Shown here piece after piece: positions 47,652 to 59,636 of a stretch of DNA of 64,000 nucleotides (position 1 is the stretch's first letter; each line of letters opens with the position of its first letter). Below the pieces are notes generated by a model, which was not told where the DNA came from, made no database searches, and saw only the letters and a list, made by a program, of their open reading frames with translations. The position numbers were made by a program, and so were the translations under genes. Source of the DNA: Salpingoeca rosetta (lineage: Eukaryota; Protista; Choanoflagellata); assembly GCA_033442325.1 (NCBI GenBank), contig JAWQFM010000019.1, positions 479,357 to 543,356 on the forward strand, given 5' to 3'.

Positions 47652-48613
47652 CTATTGGTGCTGCGGGGCACGCTGGTGCTGTAACTGGTGTTGCAGCTGC
47701 TGCAGCTGTTGAAAGGAGAGCTGTTGATGGGCTGGTTGCTGTTGCTGGGCGGGGAAAGATGGCTGCATGTGCATGCCTGCAAGCATCATCTGCACGCGTG
47801 GCGACCTTTGCAAGAGGGTGGGCCACGCACGCGCACGCAACTCCTTCACCTCATCAAACAGGTCCGTGTACTCCGTGGCCAGCTTCATCTTCGTCTTGTT
47901 GAGCTGGTTGGCAGCGTGTTCAATCTCCTGCCATCGCATGCCCTTCAAGTCCGACAGCGGCGCTGTCGGCTGCGGCCACACGCTGTACGGCTGCTGGTGC
48001 GATTGGGGATCGAGCACCCACACGCCCACAGGAACCGCGCCGTGCATGTGCATGGGGAATTGTGAGAACGCCGAGGCGTGTGGGGGCACGTGCAACTGTG
48101 CCTGCTGAATCTGCTGTGGGTGCTGTGGGTGCTGTGGGTGCTGTGGGTGCTGTGGTTGGGGTAACCCTGGGAATAACACGTGCGGGAGCATCATGCCAGC
48201 GGTTGTGGGAGGGACGCTCGAGAAAGGCTGCTGCTGGTGTTGTTGTAACGGTTGCTGTGACGCGGGCTGCTGTGATGGTTGTTGGTGCTGCTGCTGCTGT
48301 TGTTGGTGGTGTATGGCGAGCAGCGCGGGATTGATGCCCATCATGGCGGGGTGCATCGTGCCTGGTGCCGTCAGTGATGCCGGCACGTGTGGCTGCTGTT
48401 CTTGCTGTTCTTGCTGTTCTTGCTGGTGCTGGTGCTGTGGGTGTTGCTGGTGCTGTGGGTGTTGCTGGTGCTGTGGGTGTTGTTGGAGCATCTGCAACGC
48501 TTGTGCAGTGCTCACGCCTTGCATGCCTTGCATGCCTTGCATGGCATGCAGCAGCTGCGCCATCTGTTGTTGTTGGAGTGGAGACATATGTTGGAGCGAA
48601 GAGTGCATCGCAA

Positions 48614-48644
<31 letters not shown>

Positions 48645-49882
48645 GTGGGAGGATGACGGGGTGTGGTGTTGCGCTCCCTGCGCAAATAGCAAGCTGGACG
48701 GAAAAGCTTTGAAGGCACTGGTTGCTTCGTGTCCGTGTGCTGTTGCGGTGCGCTGGGTGGACGGGTCCAGCCTCGTTGCTTCGGGCGCTGTTGGAGGTGG
48801 AGGTGGCGATGGTGCTGATGCTGTTGCACGTGCCTGTGGTGGCGCTGCTGTTGCTACCGTTGTGGTTGCGGCACCCACAATGCCTGCACTGTCACCAACG
48901 GGCACGGTGAACGAGCTCTTGCGACTGCGGTCGATCCCAGAGTCTGTGGTGCGCGAACGCCTGTCGTCGGGGGCGCGCGCTGCCGACTTCTGTGTCACCT
49001 GCTGTGCCGCTTGCTGCAGCAATGCCAGGCCTTCCTGCTCTGATCCCTCTTCGTCGTGGCCCTGTCCTCGTCCGTGCTGCGGCGGCTGCTGCAGCCGTTG
49101 TTGGCGCTGTTGTTGTGGTGGTTGTTGTGGCATTGGAGTAACGCCGTGCTTTGGACCGTGCTTGCGGTGCTGTGATGACGATGGCACGTCAGTGGCAGTG
49201 TGCATGCGCGTGCGCGCGTGCTCCTGTAGCGGCGCACCTGATCGACCACCGCGCAGTGCCGACTGCTGCTGCTGTTGTTGTTCCTCATGTTGTTGCCGGA
49301 CATGGTGTGGTGCGCGCCCCATCTTTGGCGCCTTTTTCGGCGTTTCGTTATCGCAATCACCGCCACCGCTGTTGCTGTTGCTGTTGTCGCTGCTGTTGCT
49401 GTGCCGGCTGTGTGCAGCACGCTTGCGACTGTGTTTCTTCTTTCTGCGCTTGCGCTCCTTCCTGTCCTTGCGAGAGGACGTGGTGGATGTGTATGCGTGG
49501 CCGTGACCGTGGCCGTTGTTGTGGTTGCCAGTGCGGTGATCGCCACTGTTGTCGCTGCTGCCACTGCCTTCACCGCTGTTGTTGTTGGACTGCTTGTGTC
49601 TCTTGTGCTTTTTGCGCGGGTGATGGTGATGGTGGTGGTGGCGTGGCGGTGCGTTGTGCTCGCGCGCGTGTTCGTGCTTGTCCTCGTGCCCGCTGCCGTG
49701 TTCGGACGTGAGGGGCGAACTGGATGAGCGGGAGTTGTCGCCTCCTTGCCGGTGGGCCTCTTCCACACGGGCGTGGGCCCGTGCATTTGTTGCGCGTATT
49801 GCGCCTGCCGCCGTTGGACGTGTGGAGCCAGTGTCTCCTGCATGCATGCAAGGCAGTGATGCGTGCGCAAAAATTGAGGTAG

Positions 49883-49964
<82 letters not shown>

Positions 49965-50446
49965 NNNNNNNNNNNNNNNNNNNNNNNNNNNNNNNNNNNN
50001 NNNNNNNNNNNNNNNNNNNNNNNNNNNNNNNNNNNNNNNNNNNNNNNNNNNNNNNNNNNNNNNNCAAGACCACCACATGTGTAGTGGAGGGGGGGGGGGG
50101 TCGGCCACGCAACACTTAAGTGTGTGCACTTGCTTGACGTATCACCACCACACTATTGGATTGGCTTGCACCATTGCAACACACAAGCACAATAAAACGC
50201 ACGTGTTGTCAACGCTGATGAAGAAGTGACGAGAGTACCTTGCTGCTTGCCTTCACGCTTGCCTGCAAGCACGGCACCTGCTGAAGGATCACGCTGGTGG
50301 TGGTGGTGGTGGTGGTGGTGGTGGTGGTGGTGGTGCTGCTGCTGCTGCTGGGGCACTGGGGCGGTTGGAGATGGCGTGCTTGCGTGGGACGGGTCTTTGC
50401 TGCTGTGGGCGCGGGATTGTGCCTCTTGCGAATGAGGAGATGCCAT
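47652..50446 (-). CDS. Q/H/P-rich low-complexity protein with a basic NLS-like cluster and a short C-terminal helical segment
   Basis: A stop-free exon of about 2.2 kb (47652-49840) plus a probable first exon MASPHSQEAQ (ATG 50446); contains RKDRKERKRRKKKH and LSDLKGMRWQEIEHAANQLNKTKMKLATEYTDLFDEVKELR. No recognised domain. Confidence 0.6.
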
Positions 50447-50930
50447 CTTGGTGTTGAGGCGGACGAGTGCAAATGTGGAAGGGGGAGGGGAAGTCTGTGT
50501 GCCGTTCTGCATAATGCATGCGAGGAAGCGAAGGGGGAGGGGAGAGGGGAGGTGTGAGAATGGGGATGTGAAACTGCCATCGAGCGACGCTGTGTATGTA
50601 TGTGTGTGTGTGTGTGTGTCTGTGTGTGTGTGTCTGTCTGTCTGTTTGTGTGTGTGAACGAGGGAGGGGTAGCTGTGCATCACAGCGTGCATGCAAGCAA
50701 CCCAGGAAGCGACCCAGGAAGCGCCGATGTACACAGACCTTGATGAGACGCTTGGAGAGGGCACTGTGTGCTCATGTGCTGTTAGTTCGCGAGTTGATCT
50801 ACAAGAAGGGAGTGTGTGCGTGGGGATGTGTGCGTGATGAGGCACGGATGAGGAAGAATGGTTGTCAAGGGGGGGGGGGGGTGATTTCGTCACACAAGTG
50901 GATCAGCGGTGTATGCTGTGCATGGCACAT

Positions 50931-50971
<41 letters not shown>

Positions 50972-53867
50972 CACACACACATGCACACACACATGCACAC
51001 ACACACACACACACGACGTGCATGTATTTCATGTACAATCAGTCACCAAGGCCATCCAGCCAAACCATGCACCGACAAGTCAAATGGACTGGTGGAGAAG
51101 AATATATGGATGGGGGGGGGCGCAATGCATTGCATGTGTGCGCCACTCAAGACCATCACTCACCAAGACCAAGATCGTCCGCTGGTGCAGCGACAGCCGC
51201 TGAATGGTTGGCAAGATGAGGGGTGGAGCGAAGAAGCAATGTGCCGAGACACGCAACAAGCTTGAGTGCATGAGTTGATGCCTCTGGTCGGTGGTGGGGA
51301 GGGCTGTCGTGGAGGGGGAAATGCGCTTCGTTGTTTGAGACGAGATCACAGAGTCACCGTGAGTCAGGTGAACGAGTCAGGATGTTGCTGTGGGGCGAGG
51401 GCAACGGCGTGATGCTTGGGATCAGGGATAGGGATGAAAGCGATGATCGCCCGGCCCGCGCATGTGAGGCGCGGGGCTGCTGGGTTTGTGTGTTGGACTG
51501 CAATGTTTACCTACCAAGCCACACACGCAGTTGTGAGAGTAGCTGCGGTGCAGGCAACGACGTTGCTGCTGCTGCTGCTGCTGCTGCAATGGAGCAAAAC
51601 GGTTGCACGGTTGCACTTGTGCTTGCGCTTGGCACTTGGCACTTGTTGCGAGCTTCACTTGAATATATAAGTGGTGGGCTGGGGTGGTTGGTGTGCTGAA
51701 TTGCTCGAACGTTGATGGTGATCCTGGGTGATGTAGCGGCTGTTGTGGTGGCCAACGTAACGTAAACGTTGATGTGTGTCACTCACCAGGACGGCGACTG
51801 CTTGCAGGAACAACTCGTGAAGCAAGAGGTGAGGGCACAGCAGCCTCGACTCATGCAGAGATCGTGCAGCCGGACCAAACACAGGCCACGATTCAGGAGA
51901 CGATCGACTGCGCCCCAAAGAAAGAGTGATGGTGTGCAGAGCAGCGGCAATGGAGCGGGGGATGCGTCGAAGTGAATGGGTGGTGGAGGCACGCGGTAAG
52001 GCTGGGCTGTGTGGCGTGCAAGGGGATTGGTGTGGAGATCAAGCAACGACAAGCACGGAAGCAAGCAAGGGCGATGAAGGGGCAAGCAAGGCAAGCCAGC
52101 GAGCAGAATCAAGGGAGCGATAGCCCCACCCCACACATGCACCCACACATGCATCAGCGCACACTCACACACGAACATACCGGTGAAGGATGGTGGCGTG
52201 GAAAAATGCGGGCGAGGAGCAAGGCGCAAGCCCCTTTCGCGCGTGGATTGGTCGATTGGCCGTCACACCCCCCTCCTCGTGTGTTGCGTGGGTTGTGCGA
52301 GTGTTTGGGGTGTTTGGGTGCTGAAGCCAGCCGGGGAACCACCGTGCACGAAGAAGTAAGAACAGCAAGGAGGCAGTGGCGTGGCCATCATCATCACTGT
52401 TTTTTGGTTTTGAAACCGCGACAGCAACCAGCAAAGATCCACAGAAAAGGCCAGCAAGCGGACAGGCCGTGTTTGGTTGCGGGTTGTGGTATGCAACGCG
52501 AACGAGCCATCGCAACCACCTTGCGTAGTGTGACATGCCCGATGGACAGGTGGGGAGAGCGCGAAAGTGGTGGAGCGGGAGAGGAGACGGCCAACGAAGC
52601 ACGCAAAGATCAAACGCGCTCATGTAAAACAGCGTGCACATCCTTGCTTCGTTGCACGCCGAACCTGCCTGCGTGCAGGCAGCGAGAGCAAGCAAGCGGC
52701 AAGAAAGCGTGTTCAGCGTGGGAACGCAAACGACGAATGAAGCCGTGAGTGCAGCAAGCGGAAAGCAGCAGCAGCCAGCCAGCAGATTGGCAAAACCTTC
52801 GCCGTTGCATCCATCGTTGCATCGTGGTCGTTGCTTCATTCATCGTTGATCGACAAGCGCTTGTGCTGGGTGGGGGTTGCGCAGAAACGCACCCACGCAG
52901 CCAACACACCCGCAATCACATTGTGTGCGACCATGAGGCAAGCAACGATCTGCATCGGGACATTGGGTGTTTCGGAAGTGGCTCGAAGGCATGTGCGGGT
53001 TGTCCTGGTGTGTCCCGCTCGCGAACCCGCGGCTGCAAATGGGCGGACAGGCATGAAACCTCGTGGCCACGAGCACGTTCGACAGAGTTAAAACAAAGAG
53101 GTGAGGCGTGTGCAAAGAGGGGCGTTCGATACGTCGAATGCCCCGTCCAATCGCGGCAGCTTTTGCAAGGAAGGGTCATTGCAGGCAATCGCGTTCGCGG
53201 GTCATCGAGACTTTCAACGACAACGCGGCGTCCCGGTTTTGTTTTGTTTGGTTTTGTTTTGTTTGTTTGCATGCGTGTGTAGGTGTGTGTGTGGTCGCGT
53301 TCGGTTCTTTGACCCGCGCGAGTTCAAACGCTGACTCGATCTCGAGCAAGTGATGCAAGGTTGCATCAGGCAGAATGAAATCGTGATTGAAGGTCTTTGG
53401 GAGCGTTGTGACTCGCGAGGAAGAGTGGCGGTTAGCGACAGTATGAAGTGTAGTGGAGTGCGACTGACTTCAGGTTTTGACGATGAGTCAGCCACAGTTC
53501 GCATGAGTCATGTGCCAGTGACACTTCACACACTCGGATGGATAGATGGATGGATGATGTACGACACTCGACGAGGATGGATAGGATGGATGGATGACTC
53601 GACTACTCGATGACTGGATGAAACAACCACAACCTAGTCACAGTCGCACAGGGCCTGTAGGCCTGTGCCCATCCCATGCAAGATCGAAGCAAATCTTGCA
53701 GCACTGCAACGAGGATGACGTTCATTTTCCAACCTTCCCTTCCGTCCTTCAGATCTGATCCTTCCAATTCCAAGCACAAGCCTACAAGCCTTCAACAAGA
53801 AGACCCCGTCAAGTCAAGTAGTCAAGTCCATCCGGGTTCCACACGACGACAACAGGACAACTGCAAC

Positions 53868-55370
53868 ATGGGAAGCTCTTCTTCTTCTTCTTCTTCGACT
53901 AGACAACCAAGAAAACCTGACGGTCTTGGAAGCCTTCGTCAATTTCATGACTGGCGTGTCACGGACAAGCGCACGTACTACAACGATCTGAACTCGGGAG
54001 GGGCATGGACTGGGTACGTGTTCGGAGCCATCTTCACGCTCGGCATCAGCACGGCATGCGTTTCCCAGCCACACCACTGGTTTTACGTCTTCGAGATTGA
54101 AAGACGTGTGGCCCAGCACGGACAACAGCGCTTGGAGACGAAATACGTTGCCGTCGGGTTCAACGTCGGCGACAACATCGAGGTGTTCATTCGCAACTCC
54201 AAACAAGAGGCAATCAAGAATGGCATCAGCACTATGGATGGGAGGCCCGCATCGGCATATCAGTTCAACCACGCGACCATGAACTGTACAGTGAAGCACC
54301 TGCACGACGTGCTGTACACGAAACGGAACAAGACCTACGGTCCTTTCAAATACAATTGCCAACACTTTGTCCGGGAGGTCGATCAGCTGCTTCAGAGAGT
54401 GATCGGCAAAGGCTCTTCATCAAAGGCACCGAAGCCTGCTGCACAGCGCCCACCCCCTCACGTTCATGCAGACGCCGCAAAACCCCATCCTTTCCAGCGA
54501 TACCTCGAGAAAGCTGGCGTGCCTGGAAAGGTTTCCGACTACTACAACATCTGCATCATTGGCGCGCAAAACAGCGGCAAAACCACCTTGAGGTACGGTC
54601 TAACGACTGCCTTTCACCTGATTGAGTCGGGAGGATGGGCTCTTCCATCGCACGCGGCGCAGAAACAGGGCAGCACAGTCGGAACGTCAGACCAAGAGCG
54701 TGCGGCTCAGCTCTTTGATCCATTGCTGAAGGAATGGAAAGCCCACATCAAGAAGGCAAAGCGCGAAGGGGGGCGTGACGCCGTTACAAATGACGATGAC
54801 AGACGTGACCCCACCCCATACAAGGTCTCCGACACTGTCATTGTCTGGGACACCAGAGGCTGGGACTGCATTGCAAGCTCGGCAGAGAAGGTCATTCGAG
54901 ACTATGGGCTTCGCTCCATGTCATCAGTGGTTGTGCTGACCCTCAACCAGAACAAGGCCACACGAGAACTTGTGCACTCTCTCAAGGCGGCGTCTGTGCA
55001 CTTCTTGCTGGCCTTGACCAAGATTGACAACGCGCTGAAGGACGACCAGCTTGACGATGACGACGTTGTGCTGACACGGCAAGAGCTGAACGAGGAAGTT
55101 TCGGCCATGTTGGAGAAGGCCAATCGCAGCATATTTGAGCTTCAGCTTCAAGACGGAGAGCAGCTCAGCGACAAGCTGATGGCGGTCAACCTCAAAGGCA
55201 CCATGACATGCGTGCCAGAAAAAGTCACAAGCGCCAACGTGGGTTCCCTTGCCTTTGGCACCCCTCGACTCCTCATTGGGATCCTGAAGCAACTGTTTGA
55301 AACGCACCCACGGGAAGCCTCGAAAGCAGTGGTTTCAAACCTCACATCAGCCATGCGAGCCCTGCAGTAA
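53868..55370 (+). CDS. Putatively N-myristoylated permuted papain-like (LRAT/PPPDE/NlpC-P60) domain fused to an IRG/IIGP-like P-loop GTPase; intronless, 500 aa; may splice onto the downstream arrestin
   Basis: MGSSSS start; HHWFYVF (54072) and YxxxxYNCQHF (54351) permuted His/Cys dyad; G1 GAQNSGKT (54561), PTPY..VIVWDTRG G3 (54849), LTKID G4 (55017). Confidence 0.75.
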   Translation: MGSSSSSSSSTRQPRKPDGLGSLRQFHDWRVTDKRTYYNDLNSGGAWTGYVFGAIFTLGISTACVSQPHHWFYVFEIERRVAQHGQQRLETKYVAVGFNVGDNIEVFIRNSKQEAIKNGISTMDGRPASAYQFNHATMNCTVKHLHDVLYTKRNKTYGPFKYNCQHFVREVDQLLQRVIGKGSSSKAPKPAAQRPPPHVHADAAKPHPFQRYLEKAGVPGKVSDYYNICIIGAQNSGKTTLRYGLTTAFHLIESGGWALPSHAAQKQGSTVGTSDQERAAQLFDPLLKEWKAHIKKAKREGGRDAVTNDDDRRDPTPYKVSDTVIVWDTRGWDCIASSAEKVIRDYGLRSMSSVVVLTLNQNKATRELVHSLKAASVHFLLALTKIDNALKDDQLDDDDVVLTRQELNEEVSAMLEKANRSIFELQLQDGEQLSDKLMAVNLKGTMTCVPEKVTSANVGSLAFGTPRLLIGILKQLFETHPREASKAVVSNLTSAMRALQ

Positions 55371-55566
55371 TGCCCTGCATGCAGCTGTGCACGACCCTGA
55401 AGGACGCGTCCAAGCTTCCAGTCTTCTTCTTGCACCGTCGTGCGACATTCCTTGTTTCCTTTCTCATCCACGTTCTCAGAATCTGTCAATGTTGCCTGTT
55501 TGGTTGCCTGTTCTCTGTTTGACTTCCTTTGCTGCACCCATCATAGACGTTCTTCATGTTCTGCTT

Positions 55567-55651
<85 letters not shown>

Positions 55652-55839
55652 TAGAGAGAGTGTGTGCGTCTGTGAGCGTGTGTGTGTGTGTGTTTGTGTG
55701 TGTGAGCGCAACGCATCTGCTCGGCTGCTTGTTGATGCTGTTTGATTCCACCTCGTATCTCCGCTCTTCACCTCTTCTTTCGCCGCTGCTCTCTCCTTGC
55801 CATCGCCTCACACTCTTGCACTGCCAACGCGGCTTGCAG

Positions 55840-59636
<3,797 letters not shown>

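What the first reader, a model, noticed from the sequence alone, without database searches (positions are those of the whole stretch)
53868..55370. LRAT/PPPDE-like catalytic domain fused to an immunity-related-type GTPase: possible cell-autonomous defence effector
Seen: an MGSSSS start, a Gly-rich hydrophobic stretch (GGAWTGYVFGAIFTLGISTACV), His-then-NC order (HHW...YNCQHF), a Pro-rich linker, then complete G1/G3/G4 motifs with PTPY..VW-D-xxG and TKID. Established: His-before-NCxHF is the hallmark of permuted NlpC/P60 enzymes (LRAT/PLAAT phospholipase-acyltransferases, PPPDE isopeptidases), and IRG/IIGP GTPases have similar motif spacing, can be myristoylated and attack pathogen vacuoles. Inference: a GTP-regulated membrane-targeted lipase or peptidase in a bacterivorous protist. 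This holds whether or not the arrestin fusion is real.
Basis: partly seen in the sequence, partly recalled or inferred. Interest (0 to 1): 0.8.

Follow-up and report, generated by a model that had tools for sequence, protein, structure and literature searches.

The report
Orphan lipid-enzyme-like domain fused to GTPase
The first exon of a choanoflagellate (Salpingoeca rosetta) gene encodes a probably lipid-anchored, very divergent papain-like thiol enzyme domain joined to an equally divergent GTP switch, a combination not described before; nothing yet shows that it works in defence.

Summary
Window 53868-55370 (+) is a 500-codon ORF, exon 1 of Salpingoeca rosetta PTSG_07382.

- **N-terminal domain (about residues 25-182).** It has no Pfam, PDB-sequence or word-search relatives. 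A full HMMER scan of 1.84 billion proteins found one relative, a stand-alone 178-aa protein on a Tara Oceans scaffold (E 7.5e-22).
- **Its fold.** An AlphaFold2 model (pLDDT 67.6) puts seven permuted NlpC/P60 enzymes among the top 21 of 48,161 PDB chains: TseH, DeSI-1/PPPDE, CLN5, Aichivirus 2A, YiiX, PLAAT4 and BcPPNE. His70, Tyr157 and Cys164 are invariant in both sequences. The Tyr-Cys spacing of 7 equals that of PPPDE1, and Cys164 starts a helix. I accept a permuted NlpC/P60 thiol enzyme, closer to PPPDE than to LRAT.
- **GTPase domain.** It is real (G1 232-239, G3 328-331, G4 384-387) but reaches no curated family threshold. IRG-likeness rests only on ESM-Atlas structural neighbours (TM about 0.57).
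- **Defence role.** No evidence supports it.
- **Arrestin fusion.** The ORF's stop codon lies inside the annotated splice donor. Splicing would join it to a beta-arrestin that lacks its first 68 residues.

The scan had also noted this same stretch as s1-438638.

The parts
53868..55365 (+). Exon 1 of Salpingoeca rosetta PTSG_07382. It gives 499 codons plus the first two bases of codon 500. Read unspliced to the TAA at 55368-55370, it is a 500-aa ORF.
53868..53885 (+). MGSSSS start (Gly2, Ser6), an N-myristoylation-type signal. The Kozak context is strong (aacATGg).
   Evidence: the homologue P0002 starts MGASPS at the aligned position. The fit to the NMT consensus is from my own knowledge and no predictor was run.
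53940..54413 (+). Divergent permuted NlpC/P60 (PPPDE/LRAT-like) domain, residues about 25-182. The model's element order is beta1 (30-39), hydrophobic helix (46-58), His69/His70 followed by beta2 (71-83), beta3 (86-98, ending at invariant Asn99), beta4, helix, beta5, helix, Tyr157, then a helix starting at Cys164.
53997..54062 (+). Gly/Thr-rich hydrophobic segment, residues 44-65. Kyte-Doolittle maximum is 1.4 over 19 residues, below the usual transmembrane cut-off. It lies in the beta1-beta2 loop, where YiiX and BcPPNE carry helix alphaB that lines the hydrophobic S1 pocket.
   Evidence: Equating it with alphaB is my inference.
54072..54077 (+). His69-His70, the candidate catalytic His. Both are invariant and sit just before strand beta2.
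54336..54359 (+). Tyr157 to Cys164. The invariant Tyr lies 7 residues before the invariant Cys of the NCQHF motif, and the Cys is the first residue of helix 164-182.
   Evidence: PPPDE1 has Tyr101/Cys108 (PMC3142127, PMC9012467).
54414..54512 (+). Pro/Lys/Ala-rich linker, residues 183-215, modelled with low confidence.
54540..55365 (+). Divergent TRAFAC-type GTPase domain with a helical tail, residues about 225-499. G1 is at 54561-54584, the candidate switch I Thr (TPY) at 54813-54821, G3 DTRG at 54849-54860 and G4 TKID at 55017-55028. About 88 residues separate G1 from G3.
55366..55839 (+). Annotated intron 1. The donor CA|GTAATG contains the ORF's TAA stop and the acceptor is ttgcag|TTTCCC. 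The intron holds a (GT)n microsatellite.
55840..59636 (+). Downstream exons encoding a beta-arrestin homologue that begins at the equivalent of beta-arrestin-1 residue 69. This is context, not part of the finding's coordinates.

Best explanation
Exon 1 of S. rosetta PTSG_07382 encodes a two-module protein.

**Module 1.** This is a founding member of a tiny, previously unrecognised family within the circularly permuted NlpC/P60 papain-like superfamily, nearest to PPPDE/DeSI and CLN5. It carries a His70-Tyr157-Cys164 thiol active site, with Asn99 as a possible His-orienting residue. A conserved hydrophobic helix sits in the loop that forms the lipid-binding S1 pocket in solved relatives. The N-terminus is a conserved myristoylation-type signal.

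**Module 2.** This is a complete but orphan P-loop GTPase domain with G1, G3 and G4 motifs and a long insert before switch I.

**Most likely mechanism (inferred, not shown).** The protein sits on the cytosolic face of a membrane through its myristoyl group. Cys164 attacks an acyl thioester, ester or amide bond through an acyl-enzyme intermediate. That would be protein S-depalmitoylation or phospholipid acyl hydrolysis/transfer, as in PPPDE1/2, CLN5 and PLAATs. The nucleotide state of the GTPase would gate its localisation, oligomerisation or activity. If the annotated splice is used, both modules are delivered by an N-truncated beta-arrestin scaffold.

**My odds.**
- permuted NlpC/P60 fold: 0.85
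- catalytically competent thiol enzyme: 0.65
- lipid or acyl substrate rather than isopeptide: 0.55
- functional GTPase: 0.75
- IRG-family GTPase: 0.3
- immune effector: 0.1-0.15
For: **Identity.** The ORF is identical to PTSG_07382.

**Fold.**
- The AF2 model of residues 1-200, built with its one homologue, has pTM 0.66, and the core strands have pLDDT 80-90.
- An exhaustive VIA-align search of 48,161 PDB representatives lists these permuted NlpC/P60 enzymes in the top 21:
  - TseH 6v98, Z 6.5, 117 aligned
  - DeSI-1/PPPDE 2wp7, Z 5.8, 101 aligned, 20% identity
  - CLN5 6r99, Z 5.5
  - Aichivirus 2A 7zv6, Z 4.2
  - YiiX 2if6, Z 3.7
  - PLAAT4 7zot, Z 3.6
  - BcPPNE 3kw0, Z 3.2
- All seven belong to the permuted NlpC/P60 group (PMC3142127, PMC9012467, PMC10318531, PMC11160734). 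For Aichivirus 2A and PLAAT4 the assignment is from my own knowledge.
- The independent ESM-Atlas model gives a PPPDE cluster at TM 0.56.
- P0002 touches Pfam PPPDE at the Cys motif, profile positions 102-125, E 0.079.

**Active site.**
- H69, H70, N99, Y157 and C164 are invariant at 38% overall identity.
- Y-x6-C equals PPPDE1 Tyr101/Cys108.
- Cys164 opens helix 164-182 and the His residues precede a strand.

**Lipid leaning.** Permuted members have hydrophobic S1 pockets, and YiiX binds a fatty acid. PPPDE1/2 and CLN5 are S-depalmitoylases.

**Module status.** The domain exists alone, with the same MG start, on a Tara scaffold.

**GTPase.** The motifs are in the right order. TIGR00231 matches at E 3.1e-6 from G1 to G4 and PF00009 at E 2.5e-5. 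All Atlas feature hits are MMR_HSR1, Dynamin_N or IIGP clusters at 0.91-0.92, and the top four structural rows are IIGP.
Against: - No sequence method reaches significance against any NlpC/P60 family. P0001 gives no Pfam hit, the PDB profile search found nothing relevant, and Foldseek against PDB found nothing.
- The VIA Z scores (at most 6.5) are in the range the tool calls common. An unrelated-looking BTV VP5 domain scores as high.
- The model is only moderately confident and rests on two sequences.
- His-Cys distance could not be measured.
- The Atlas search with my own model gave nothing.
- The GTPase model failed (pLDDT 37.7), and no curated GTPase family threshold is met.
- No expression, splicing or functional data exist here.
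- In-frame upstream ATGs (53676, 53715) could abolish myristoylation if the transcript starts further upstream.
Confidence: 0.6

Rival explanations
1. The protein would be a cell-autonomous defence effector: an IRG-family GTPase that targets a myristoylated lipase or peptidase to pathogen or food-vacuole membranes.
For: - The four best Atlas structural neighbours of residues 223-500 are IRG-type (PF05049) clusters at TM 0.56-0.58.
- The MGxxxS start is conserved.
- An earlier scan note (s1-432461, unchecked) reports other IRG-like GTPase genes in this genome.
- The organism eats bacteria.
Against: - There is no IIGP Pfam hit at E <= 10, and the best sequence hits are EF-Tu, FeoB, MMR_HSR1 and Era models.
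- No paralogue was found in the window, and the N-domain has no other relative among 1.84 billion proteins.
- The neighbours are signalling genes (RasGAP, SH2/CH), not a defence cluster.
- The annotated partner is beta-arrestin, a receptor-trafficking scaffold.
- No induction data exist.
Confidence: 0.12
2. The N-domain would be an isopeptidase (deSUMOylase or deubiquitinase, the original PPPDE prediction) rather than an acyl- or lipid-directed enzyme. It would act on ubiquitin-like modifications of arrestin-bound cargo.
For: - The second-best structural match is DeSI-1 (2wp7), annotated as a deSUMOylase, and it has the highest identity of all matches at 20%.
- The Tyr-Cys spacing is identical to PPPDE1.
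- Arrestins are known hubs for ubiquitin ligases (own knowledge).
Against: - PPPDE1/2 have very low endopeptidase activity towards SUMO precursors, PPPDE2 showed no deubiquitinating activity, and both are efficient S-depalmitoylases (PMC9012467).
- The permuted enzymes share hydrophobic S1 pockets (PMC3142127).
- The myristoylation signal and the conserved hydrophobic helix point to membranes.
Confidence: 0.15
3. This would be a gene-model artefact or a decaying gene. The 500-aa ORF and the arrestin exons would be separate genes wrongly joined, or the arrestin part would be a truncated pseudogene. The N-domain's resemblance to NlpC/P60 would be a chance motif on a novel or non-enzymatic fold.
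For: - The ORF has its own stop codon at 55368-55370.
- No RNA junction evidence could be obtained.
- No contig encoding exactly the 858-aa, 564-aa or 500-aa product exists outside the reference assembly.
- The fold-match Z scores are modest.
Against: - The stop lies inside a canonical GTAA donor, and the AG acceptor restores the frame into sequence that aligns with beta-arrestin-1 from residue 69 at E 3e-45.
- The arrestin part has no Met for about 280 residues, and no arrestin-like N-terminal exon is visible in intron 1 or in the 3.4 kb upstream.
- The N-domain is conserved as an intact ORF in a second organism, with all candidate catalytic residues invariant.
- Seven independent permuted NlpC/P60 structures in the top 21 of 48,161 are not expected by chance.
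Confidence: 0.13

Closest known systems
PPPDE / DeSI proteins (Pfam PF05903, MEROPS C97; PPPDE1/DESI2, DeSI-1 2wp7) and CLN5
   Same: - The order is permuted, with His before Cys.
- There is a His-Tyr-Cys active-site trio with the same Tyr-x6-Cys spacing as PPPDE1.
- The Cys sits at a helix N-terminus.
- The size is similar, about 150 residues.
- Structural matches are Z 5.8 (DeSI-1) and Z 5.5 (CLN5).
- The only family-level sequence signal is to PF05903, through the homologue P0002.
   Different: - The Pfam gathering score is not reached (13.2 versus 29.2 bits for P0002, and no hit for P0001).
- A hydrophobic helix of about 25 residues is inserted between beta1 and the His strand.
- The His-to-Cys distance is 94 residues, against 70 in PPPDE1.
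- It has an N-myristoylation-type start.
- It is fused to a GTPase, and by annotation to arrestin.
LRAT / PLAAT (H-RAS-like suppressor) acyltransferase-phospholipases and picornavirus 2A H-NC proteins (PF04970)
   Same: - The permuted fold is shared.
- The motif pair HW-x-YV and NC-x-HFV resembles the H-box and NC-box (resemblance from my own knowledge).
- Both associate with membranes.
- Structural matches are Z 4.2 (Aichivirus 2A) and Z 3.6 (PLAAT4).
   Different: - There is no Pfam LRAT hit.
- There is no conserved second His for the Cys-His-His triad; His84 falls in a gap in the homologue.
- There is no C-terminal transmembrane anchor.
- The structural scores are lower than for PPPDE, TseH and CLN5.
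Bacterial permuted NlpC/P60 enzymes: TseH (6v98), YiiX (2if6), BcPPNE (3kw0)
   Same: - TseH is the best structural match (Z 6.5, 117 residues aligned).
- A helix in the beta1-beta2 loop occupies the position of the helix that lines the fatty-acid pocket of YiiX and BcPPNE.
   Different: - No sequence similarity is detectable.
- The acidic third residue (Glu81 or Glu64) is not conserved here; Asn99 is the only invariant polar candidate.
- The protein is eukaryotic and cytosolic, not a secreted toxin or an envelope enzyme.
Immunity-related GTPases (IRG/IIGP, PF05049) and the wider MMR_HSR1 / dynamin-like G-domain neighbourhood
   Same: - G1 GxxxxGKT, a hydrophobic strand followed by DxxG, and TKxD are present, with about 56 residues between G3 and G4.
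- A helical stretch follows G4.
- The Atlas structural neighbours are IIGP clusters (TM 0.56-0.58).
- An N-terminal myristoylation signal is present, as in some IRGs (own knowledge).
   Different: - There is no PF05049 hit.
- About 88 residues separate G1 from G3 because of a charged insert.
- No N-terminal helical domain of the IIGP type is present; a papain-like enzyme domain takes that place.
- The sub-threshold sequence hits go to EF-Tu, FeoB, Era and small_GTP models.

Membership tests
Circularly permuted NlpC/P60 superfamily (PPNE, including PPPDE, LRAT, YaeF/YiiX) | The catalytic His lies on a beta-strand N-terminal to the catalytic Cys, and the Cys sits at the N-terminus of an alpha-helix. 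| tested here: met
   His69/70 come immediately before strand 71-83, and Cys164 is the first residue of helix 164-182 in the AF2 model. Both are invariant in the only homologue. The definition is from PMC3142127.
Circularly permuted NlpC/P60 superfamily | An additional conserved Tyr upstream of the Cys, giving a His-Tyr-Cys trio. | tested here: met
   Tyr157 is invariant and lies 7 residues before Cys164. PPPDE1 has Tyr101 and Cys108.
Circularly permuted NlpC/P60 superfamily | A core of a five-stranded beta-sheet plus two helices, superposable on solved members. | tested here: met
   The model has five strands followed by helices 142-153 and 164-182. Seven permuted NlpC/P60 structures are among the top 21 of 48,161 chains, at Z 3.2-6.5. 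Caveat: the Z values are modest and Foldseek found none of these structures.
Circularly permuted NlpC/P60 superfamily | His and Cys side chains juxtaposed in three dimensions, with a third polar residue orienting the His. | not testable with these tools
   Model coordinates are not returned. Asn99, invariant at the end of the strand paired with the His strand, is a candidate by inference only.
Pfam PF05903 Peptidase_C97 (PPPDE) | A profile match at the gathering score of 29.2 bits. | tested here: not met
   P0001 gives no hit. P0002 scores 13.2 bits (E 0.079) over the Cys motif only.
Pfam PF04970 LRAT / PLAAT | A profile match, a Cys-His-His triad and a C-terminal membrane anchor. | tested here: not met
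   There is no Pfam hit at E <= 10. There is no conserved second His after His70; His84 is gapped in P0002. The domain is followed by a linker and a GTPase, not a transmembrane helix.
P-loop GTPase, TRAFAC class | G1 GxxxxGK[ST], G3 DxxG after a hydrophobic strand and G4 [NT]KxD, in that order. | tested here: met
   The motifs are at 232-239, 328-331 and 384-387. TIGR00231 spans G1 to G4 at E 3.1e-6 and PF00009 matches at E 2.5e-5, both under the curated cut-offs.
IRG / IIGP immunity-related GTPases (PF05049) | A profile match to PF05049, or grouping with IRGs in a phylogeny. | tested here: not met
   There is no PF05049 hit at E <= 10, and no homologue at all by word search. No phylogeny is possible without relatives.
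IRG / IIGP immunity-related GTPases (PF05049) | A G domain structurally closest to IIGP, with flanking helical domains. | tested here: inconclusive
   The top four neighbours of the Atlas ESM model are IIGP clusters at TM 0.56-0.58, but that model has mean pLDDT 0.60. My own AF2 model failed at pLDDT 37.7.
IRG / IIGP immunity-related GTPases (PF05049) | Induction by infection, or a role at pathogen vacuoles. | not testable with these tools
   No reads could be laid, and no paper mentions the gene.
Beta-arrestin (downstream exons, context) | Complete Arrestin_N and Arrestin_C domains. | tested here: not met
   Arrestin_C matches at E 4.5e-10, and Arrestin_N matches only from profile position 61. 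The alignment to beta-arrestin-1 starts at its residue 69, E 3.4e-45. The first 68 residues are absent.

The most novel reading that the evidence does not exclude
PTSG_07382 would be a genuine three-part machine. The phosphate-sensing N-terminal strands of a beta-arrestin have been replaced by a myristoylated, lipid-directed thiol hydrolase (depalmitoylase or phospholipase type) and a GTP switch. That would make it an arrestin-targeted, nucleotide-gated enzyme acting on receptors or membranes in the closest relatives of animals. Splicing versus read-through of a stop codon embedded in the splice donor would choose between the 858-aa scaffolded form and a free 500-aa form.
Probability: 0.15. 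Interest if true: 0.75.

Novelty: new variant of a known kind. Interest (0 to 1): 0.5.

Why it matters
**A very small family.** Permuted NlpC/P60 enzymes (PLAATs, LRAT, PPPDE/DeSI, CLN5) have become known as lipid and protein-acyl remodelling enzymes. This domain is a member so divergent that a scan of 1.84 billion proteins finds one relative. It shows that the superfamily still has hidden eukaryotic branches that only structure-level comparison reveals.

**An undescribed fusion.** I found no paper describing a fusion of such a domain to a GTPase, or to a beta-arrestin. If the fusion is real, it would give a directly testable case of a nucleotide-gated, scaffold-targeted acyl hydrolase. Salpingoeca rosetta is a genetically tractable choanoflagellate (own knowledge), so the case bears on how arrestin and GPCR trafficking and protein lipidation were wired before animals arose.

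**Limits.** As it stands this is a one-species orphan with no functional data, and the immunity framing is unsupported.

Tried and rejected
**Sequence searches**
- Pfam, NCBIfam and PADLOC scans of each domain gave only sub-threshold GTPase hits, nothing for the N-domain of P0001, and no defence-system model.
- PDB sequence searches were blank or noise. They used the whole ORF, the two-sequence profile and the GTPase domain, and returned DHX58 and weak FeoB P-loop matches.
- Word-index homologue searches were run on the 500-aa ORF, the N-domain and the GTPase domain. The first found only the gene itself and the other two nothing.

**Related loci**
- The search for related loci found nothing with the N-domain alignment (metagenome and viral collections) or with the GTPase (genome and metagenome collections).

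**Structure searches**
- Foldseek against PDB gave no significant match. Foldseek against BFVD gave only marginal reovirus VP2 and DUF4105 rows.
- The pdb_via re-ranking gave only BTV VP5 and Mediator subunits, because Foldseek had not shortlisted any NlpC/P60 chains.
- The Atlas shape search with my own model gave TM <= 0.33.
- The single-sequence AF2 model of the GTPase was unusable at pLDDT 37.7, so I ran no fold search on it.

**RNA evidence**
- Exact-product look-ups for the 564-aa and 500-aa ORFs found no other contigs.

**Readings rejected**
- A transmembrane reading of residues 44-65: hydrophobicity is 1.4, below the usual cut-off, and a myristoylated N-terminus argues against it.
- An unannotated arrestin N-terminal exon in intron 1 or upstream: none is visible by eye.
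- A GTPase downstream of the stand-alone homologue: none lies in the remaining 500 bp.
Full report
**What is there**

Window 53868-55370 (+) is a 500-codon reading frame inside a longer ORF that begins at 53676. Residues 1-499 are identical to the first 499 residues of an 858-aa NCBI protein. That protein is hypothetical protein PTSG_07382 of the choanoflagellate Salpingoeca rosetta, on scaffold GL832976.1.

- the MGSSSS start
- the hydrophobic stretch at residues 44-65
- HHW at 69-71
- NCQHF at 163-167
- a Pro/Lys-rich linker at 183-215
- G1 GAQNSGKT at 232-239
- TPY at 316-318
- G3 DTRG at 328-331
- G4 TKID at 384-387

**Gene structure**

The TAA stop at 55368-55370 lies inside the annotated 5' splice site (CTGCA|GTAATG). 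The acceptor (ttgcag|TTTCCC at 55839/55840) restores the frame. The downstream exons align to beta-arrestin-1 with E 3.4e-45, but only from arrestin residue 69 onward. Pfam Arrestin_N matches only from profile position 61.

Several points fit the annotated fusion:
- The arrestin part has no Met for about 280 residues.
- I saw no arrestin-like N-terminal coding piece in intron 1 or in the 3.4 kb upstream.

The fusion is therefore the only reading that gives the arrestin exons a start codon, but it is not proven. Exact-product look-ups found no other contig encoding the 858-aa, 564-aa or 500-aa products. Spliced and unspliced transcripts would give an 858-aa and a 500-aa protein respectively.

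**The N-terminal domain: sequence evidence**

Sequence methods are almost blind here.
- Pfam, NCBIfam and PADLOC gave no hit for P0001.
- PDB sequences gave no hit, even with a profile.
- The word-index search found nothing.
- A full HMMER scan of 1.84 billion representative proteins found exactly one relative. This is P0002, 178 aa, E 7.5e-22.

P0002 lies on a 2.1-kb Tara Oceans metagenome scaffold. It is a stand-alone ORF that starts with MGASPS at the aligned position and ends in a stop with no GTPase after it.

At 38% identity the invariant residues include Gly2, Ser6, His69, His70, Asn99, Tyr157, Asn163, Cys164 and Phe167. P0002 gives the only family-level sequence signal. It is a sub-threshold match of its NNCQSF region to positions 102-125 of Pfam PPPDE (PF05903), E 0.079.

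**The N-terminal domain: fold evidence**

AlphaFold2 on the two-sequence alignment gave pLDDT 67.6 and pTM 0.66, with the core strands at pLDDT 80-90. The element order is:
- strand 30-39
- helix 46-58
- strands 71-83, 86-98 and 104-109
- helix 112-121
- strand 130-141
- helix 142-153
- helix 164-182

The two His residues sit immediately before a strand, and Cys164 is the first residue of a helix. This is the papain-type arrangement in permuted order.

Foldseek against the PDB found nothing. An exhaustive VIA-align comparison with 48,161 representative chains listed the following:

| PDB chain | Protein | Z |
|---|---|---|
| 6v98 | TseH | 6.5 |
| 2wp7 | DeSI-1/PPPDE | 5.8 (20% identity over 101 aligned residues) |
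| 6r99 | CLN5 | 5.5 |
| 7zv6 | Aichivirus 2A | 4.2 |
| 2if6 | YiiX | 3.7 |
| 7zot | PLAAT4 | 3.6 |
| 3kw0 | BcPPNE | 3.2 |

The literature places these in the circularly permuted NlpC/P60 group:
- YiiX, BcPPNE and PPPDE1 (PMC3142127)
- CLN5 and PPPDE1/2 (PMC9012467)
- DeSI-1 and LRAT/PLAAT (PMC10318531)
- TseH, with triad Glu81-His64-Cys172 (PMC11160734)
- Aichivirus 2A as an H-NC protein, from my own knowledge

Each Z value alone is unremarkable. A bluetongue-virus VP5 domain scores equally well, which I cannot explain. Even so, seven members of one small structural group in the top 21 of 48,161 chains is not a chance result.

The independent ESM-Atlas model also lists a PPPDE cluster at TM 0.56. 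BFVD gives marginal rows for dsRNA-virus proteins and a DUF4105 protein. DUF4105 is the domain carried by Lnb, whose periplasmic domain resembles TseH.

**The N-terminal domain: active site and sub-family**

[quoted passage not shown] In PPPDE1 the trio is His38, Tyr101 and Cys108. Here Tyr157 is invariant and lies exactly 7 residues before Cys164.

I therefore accept the permuted NlpC/P60 assignment at about 0.85, and place the domain nearer PPPDE than LRAT:
- There is no conserved second His for the LRAT Cys-His-His triad.
- There is no C-terminal membrane anchor.
- The structural scores to LRAT-type proteins are lower.

It is not a member of either Pfam family by their own thresholds.

**The hydrophobic stretch**

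Its Kyte-Doolittle maximum is 1.4 over 19 residues, below the usual transmembrane cut-off. It lies in the beta1-beta2 loop. In YiiX and BcPPNE this loop carries helix alphaB and helps form a hydrophobic S1 pocket, and the YiiX pocket holds a fatty acid.

I read the stretch as a pocket or interfacial helix rather than a membrane span. This is an inference. Membrane attachment would come from the MGxxxS start, which fits the N-myristoyltransferase consensus (own knowledge) and is conserved in P0002.

One caveat remains. In-frame ATGs at 53676 and 53715 would give a longer, non-myristoylated protein if transcription starts further upstream. The strong Kozak context at 53868 and the homologue's start argue for the MG start.

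**The GTPase**

The G1, G3 and G4 motifs are complete and in order. TIGR00231 small_GTP matches from G1 to G4 (E 3.1e-6). PF00009, FeoB_N and MMR_HSR1 match weakly. All of these are below their curated cut-offs.

About 88 residues, including a charged insert, separate G1 from G3. No relative was found by word search or in the genome and metagenome collections.

My single-sequence AF2 model failed (pLDDT 37.7). For the ESM-Atlas model of the annotated protein, all feature hits are MMR_HSR1, Dynamin_N or IIGP clusters. The four best structural rows are IRG-type (PF05049) clusters at TM 0.56-0.58.

That makes 'IRG-like' a reasonable lead, at about 0.3, and not a finding. PF05049 itself gives no hit at E <= 10. 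The best PDB sequence match is the P-loop of FeoB.

**Function**

Shown:
- domain identities at superfamily level
- invariance of the candidate catalytic residues
- the modular nature of the N-domain, which stands alone elsewhere and is fused here

Inferred:
- Cys164 is a nucleophile acting through an acyl-enzyme intermediate.
- The substrate is more likely an acyl thioester or lipid ester than an isopeptide. PPPDE1/2 and CLN5 are efficient S-depalmitoylases with poor peptidase activity. Permuted members have hydrophobic pockets. The protein also carries membrane-targeting features.
- The GTPase gates localisation or activity.

Nothing supports an immune role. The neighbours are RasGAP and SH2/CH signalling genes. 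No paralogue expansion is seen in the window, and the N-domain has no other relative in the big search. The annotated partner is a receptor-trafficking scaffold. No paper mentions the gene or such an architecture.

An earlier scan note reports other IRG-like GTPases in this genome (s1-432461). I could not compare them.

**Verdict**

This is a real and previously undescribed domain combination. It is built from a very divergent permuted NlpC/P60 module, for which two sequences are known, and an orphan GTPase. By annotation it is fused to an N-truncated beta-arrestin.

I class it as a new variant of a known kind of enzyme in a new architecture, and not as a demonstrated defence effector. Interest is moderate (0.5). 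It would rise if the three-part fusion and a nucleotide-gated acyl-hydrolase activity were shown.

Noticed in passing
window 55366-55370: The TAA stop of the 500-aa ORF lies inside the annotated 5' splice site (CA|GTAATG). Splicing removes the stop and intron retention restores it, which is a built-in choice between an 858-aa and a 500-aa product.
   Followed up: partly
window 55840-59636: The downstream exons encode a clear beta-arrestin homologue (E 3.4e-45 to beta-arrestin-1). It lacks the first 68 residues, which hold the N-terminal strands carrying the phosphate sensor in animal arrestins (own knowledge). It has no Met for about 280 residues.
   Followed up: partly
L001:1106-1642 (Tara Oceans scaffold TARA_SAMEA2622858_METAG-scaffold_32892): This is the only relative of the N-domain among 1.84 billion proteins. 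It is a stand-alone 178-aa ORF with the same MG start and the same His, Tyr and Cys residues. The scaffold has GC 54% and its source organism is unknown.
   Followed up: partly
window 53676-53867: There are in-frame upstream ATGs at 53676 (weak Kozak context) and 53715. If they are transcribed, they would add 64 or 51 residues and remove the myristoylation signal.
   Followed up: no
N-domain model compared with PDB 7rtn/7rto/8rt0 (bluetongue virus VP5, residues about 360-512) and 8k42 (Banna virus): Outer-capsid proteins of dsRNA viruses score Z 5.4-5.9 with the N-domain model, level with the PPPDE-type hits. I could not tell whether this reflects a shared permuted-papain-like core or a common beta/alpha arrangement.
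   Followed up: no
window 47652-50446 (-): The upstream neighbour is an 809-aa predicted protein with no Pfam family on record. RasGAP genes lie on both outer flanks and an SH2+CH gene lies downstream.
   Followed up: no
   Followed up: no
window 55570-55650, 50600-51100, 56100-57330: There are long (GT)n/(CA)n and (GA)n microsatellites, and an assembly gap (N run 57003-57245) inside the introns and flanks of the gene.
   Followed up: no
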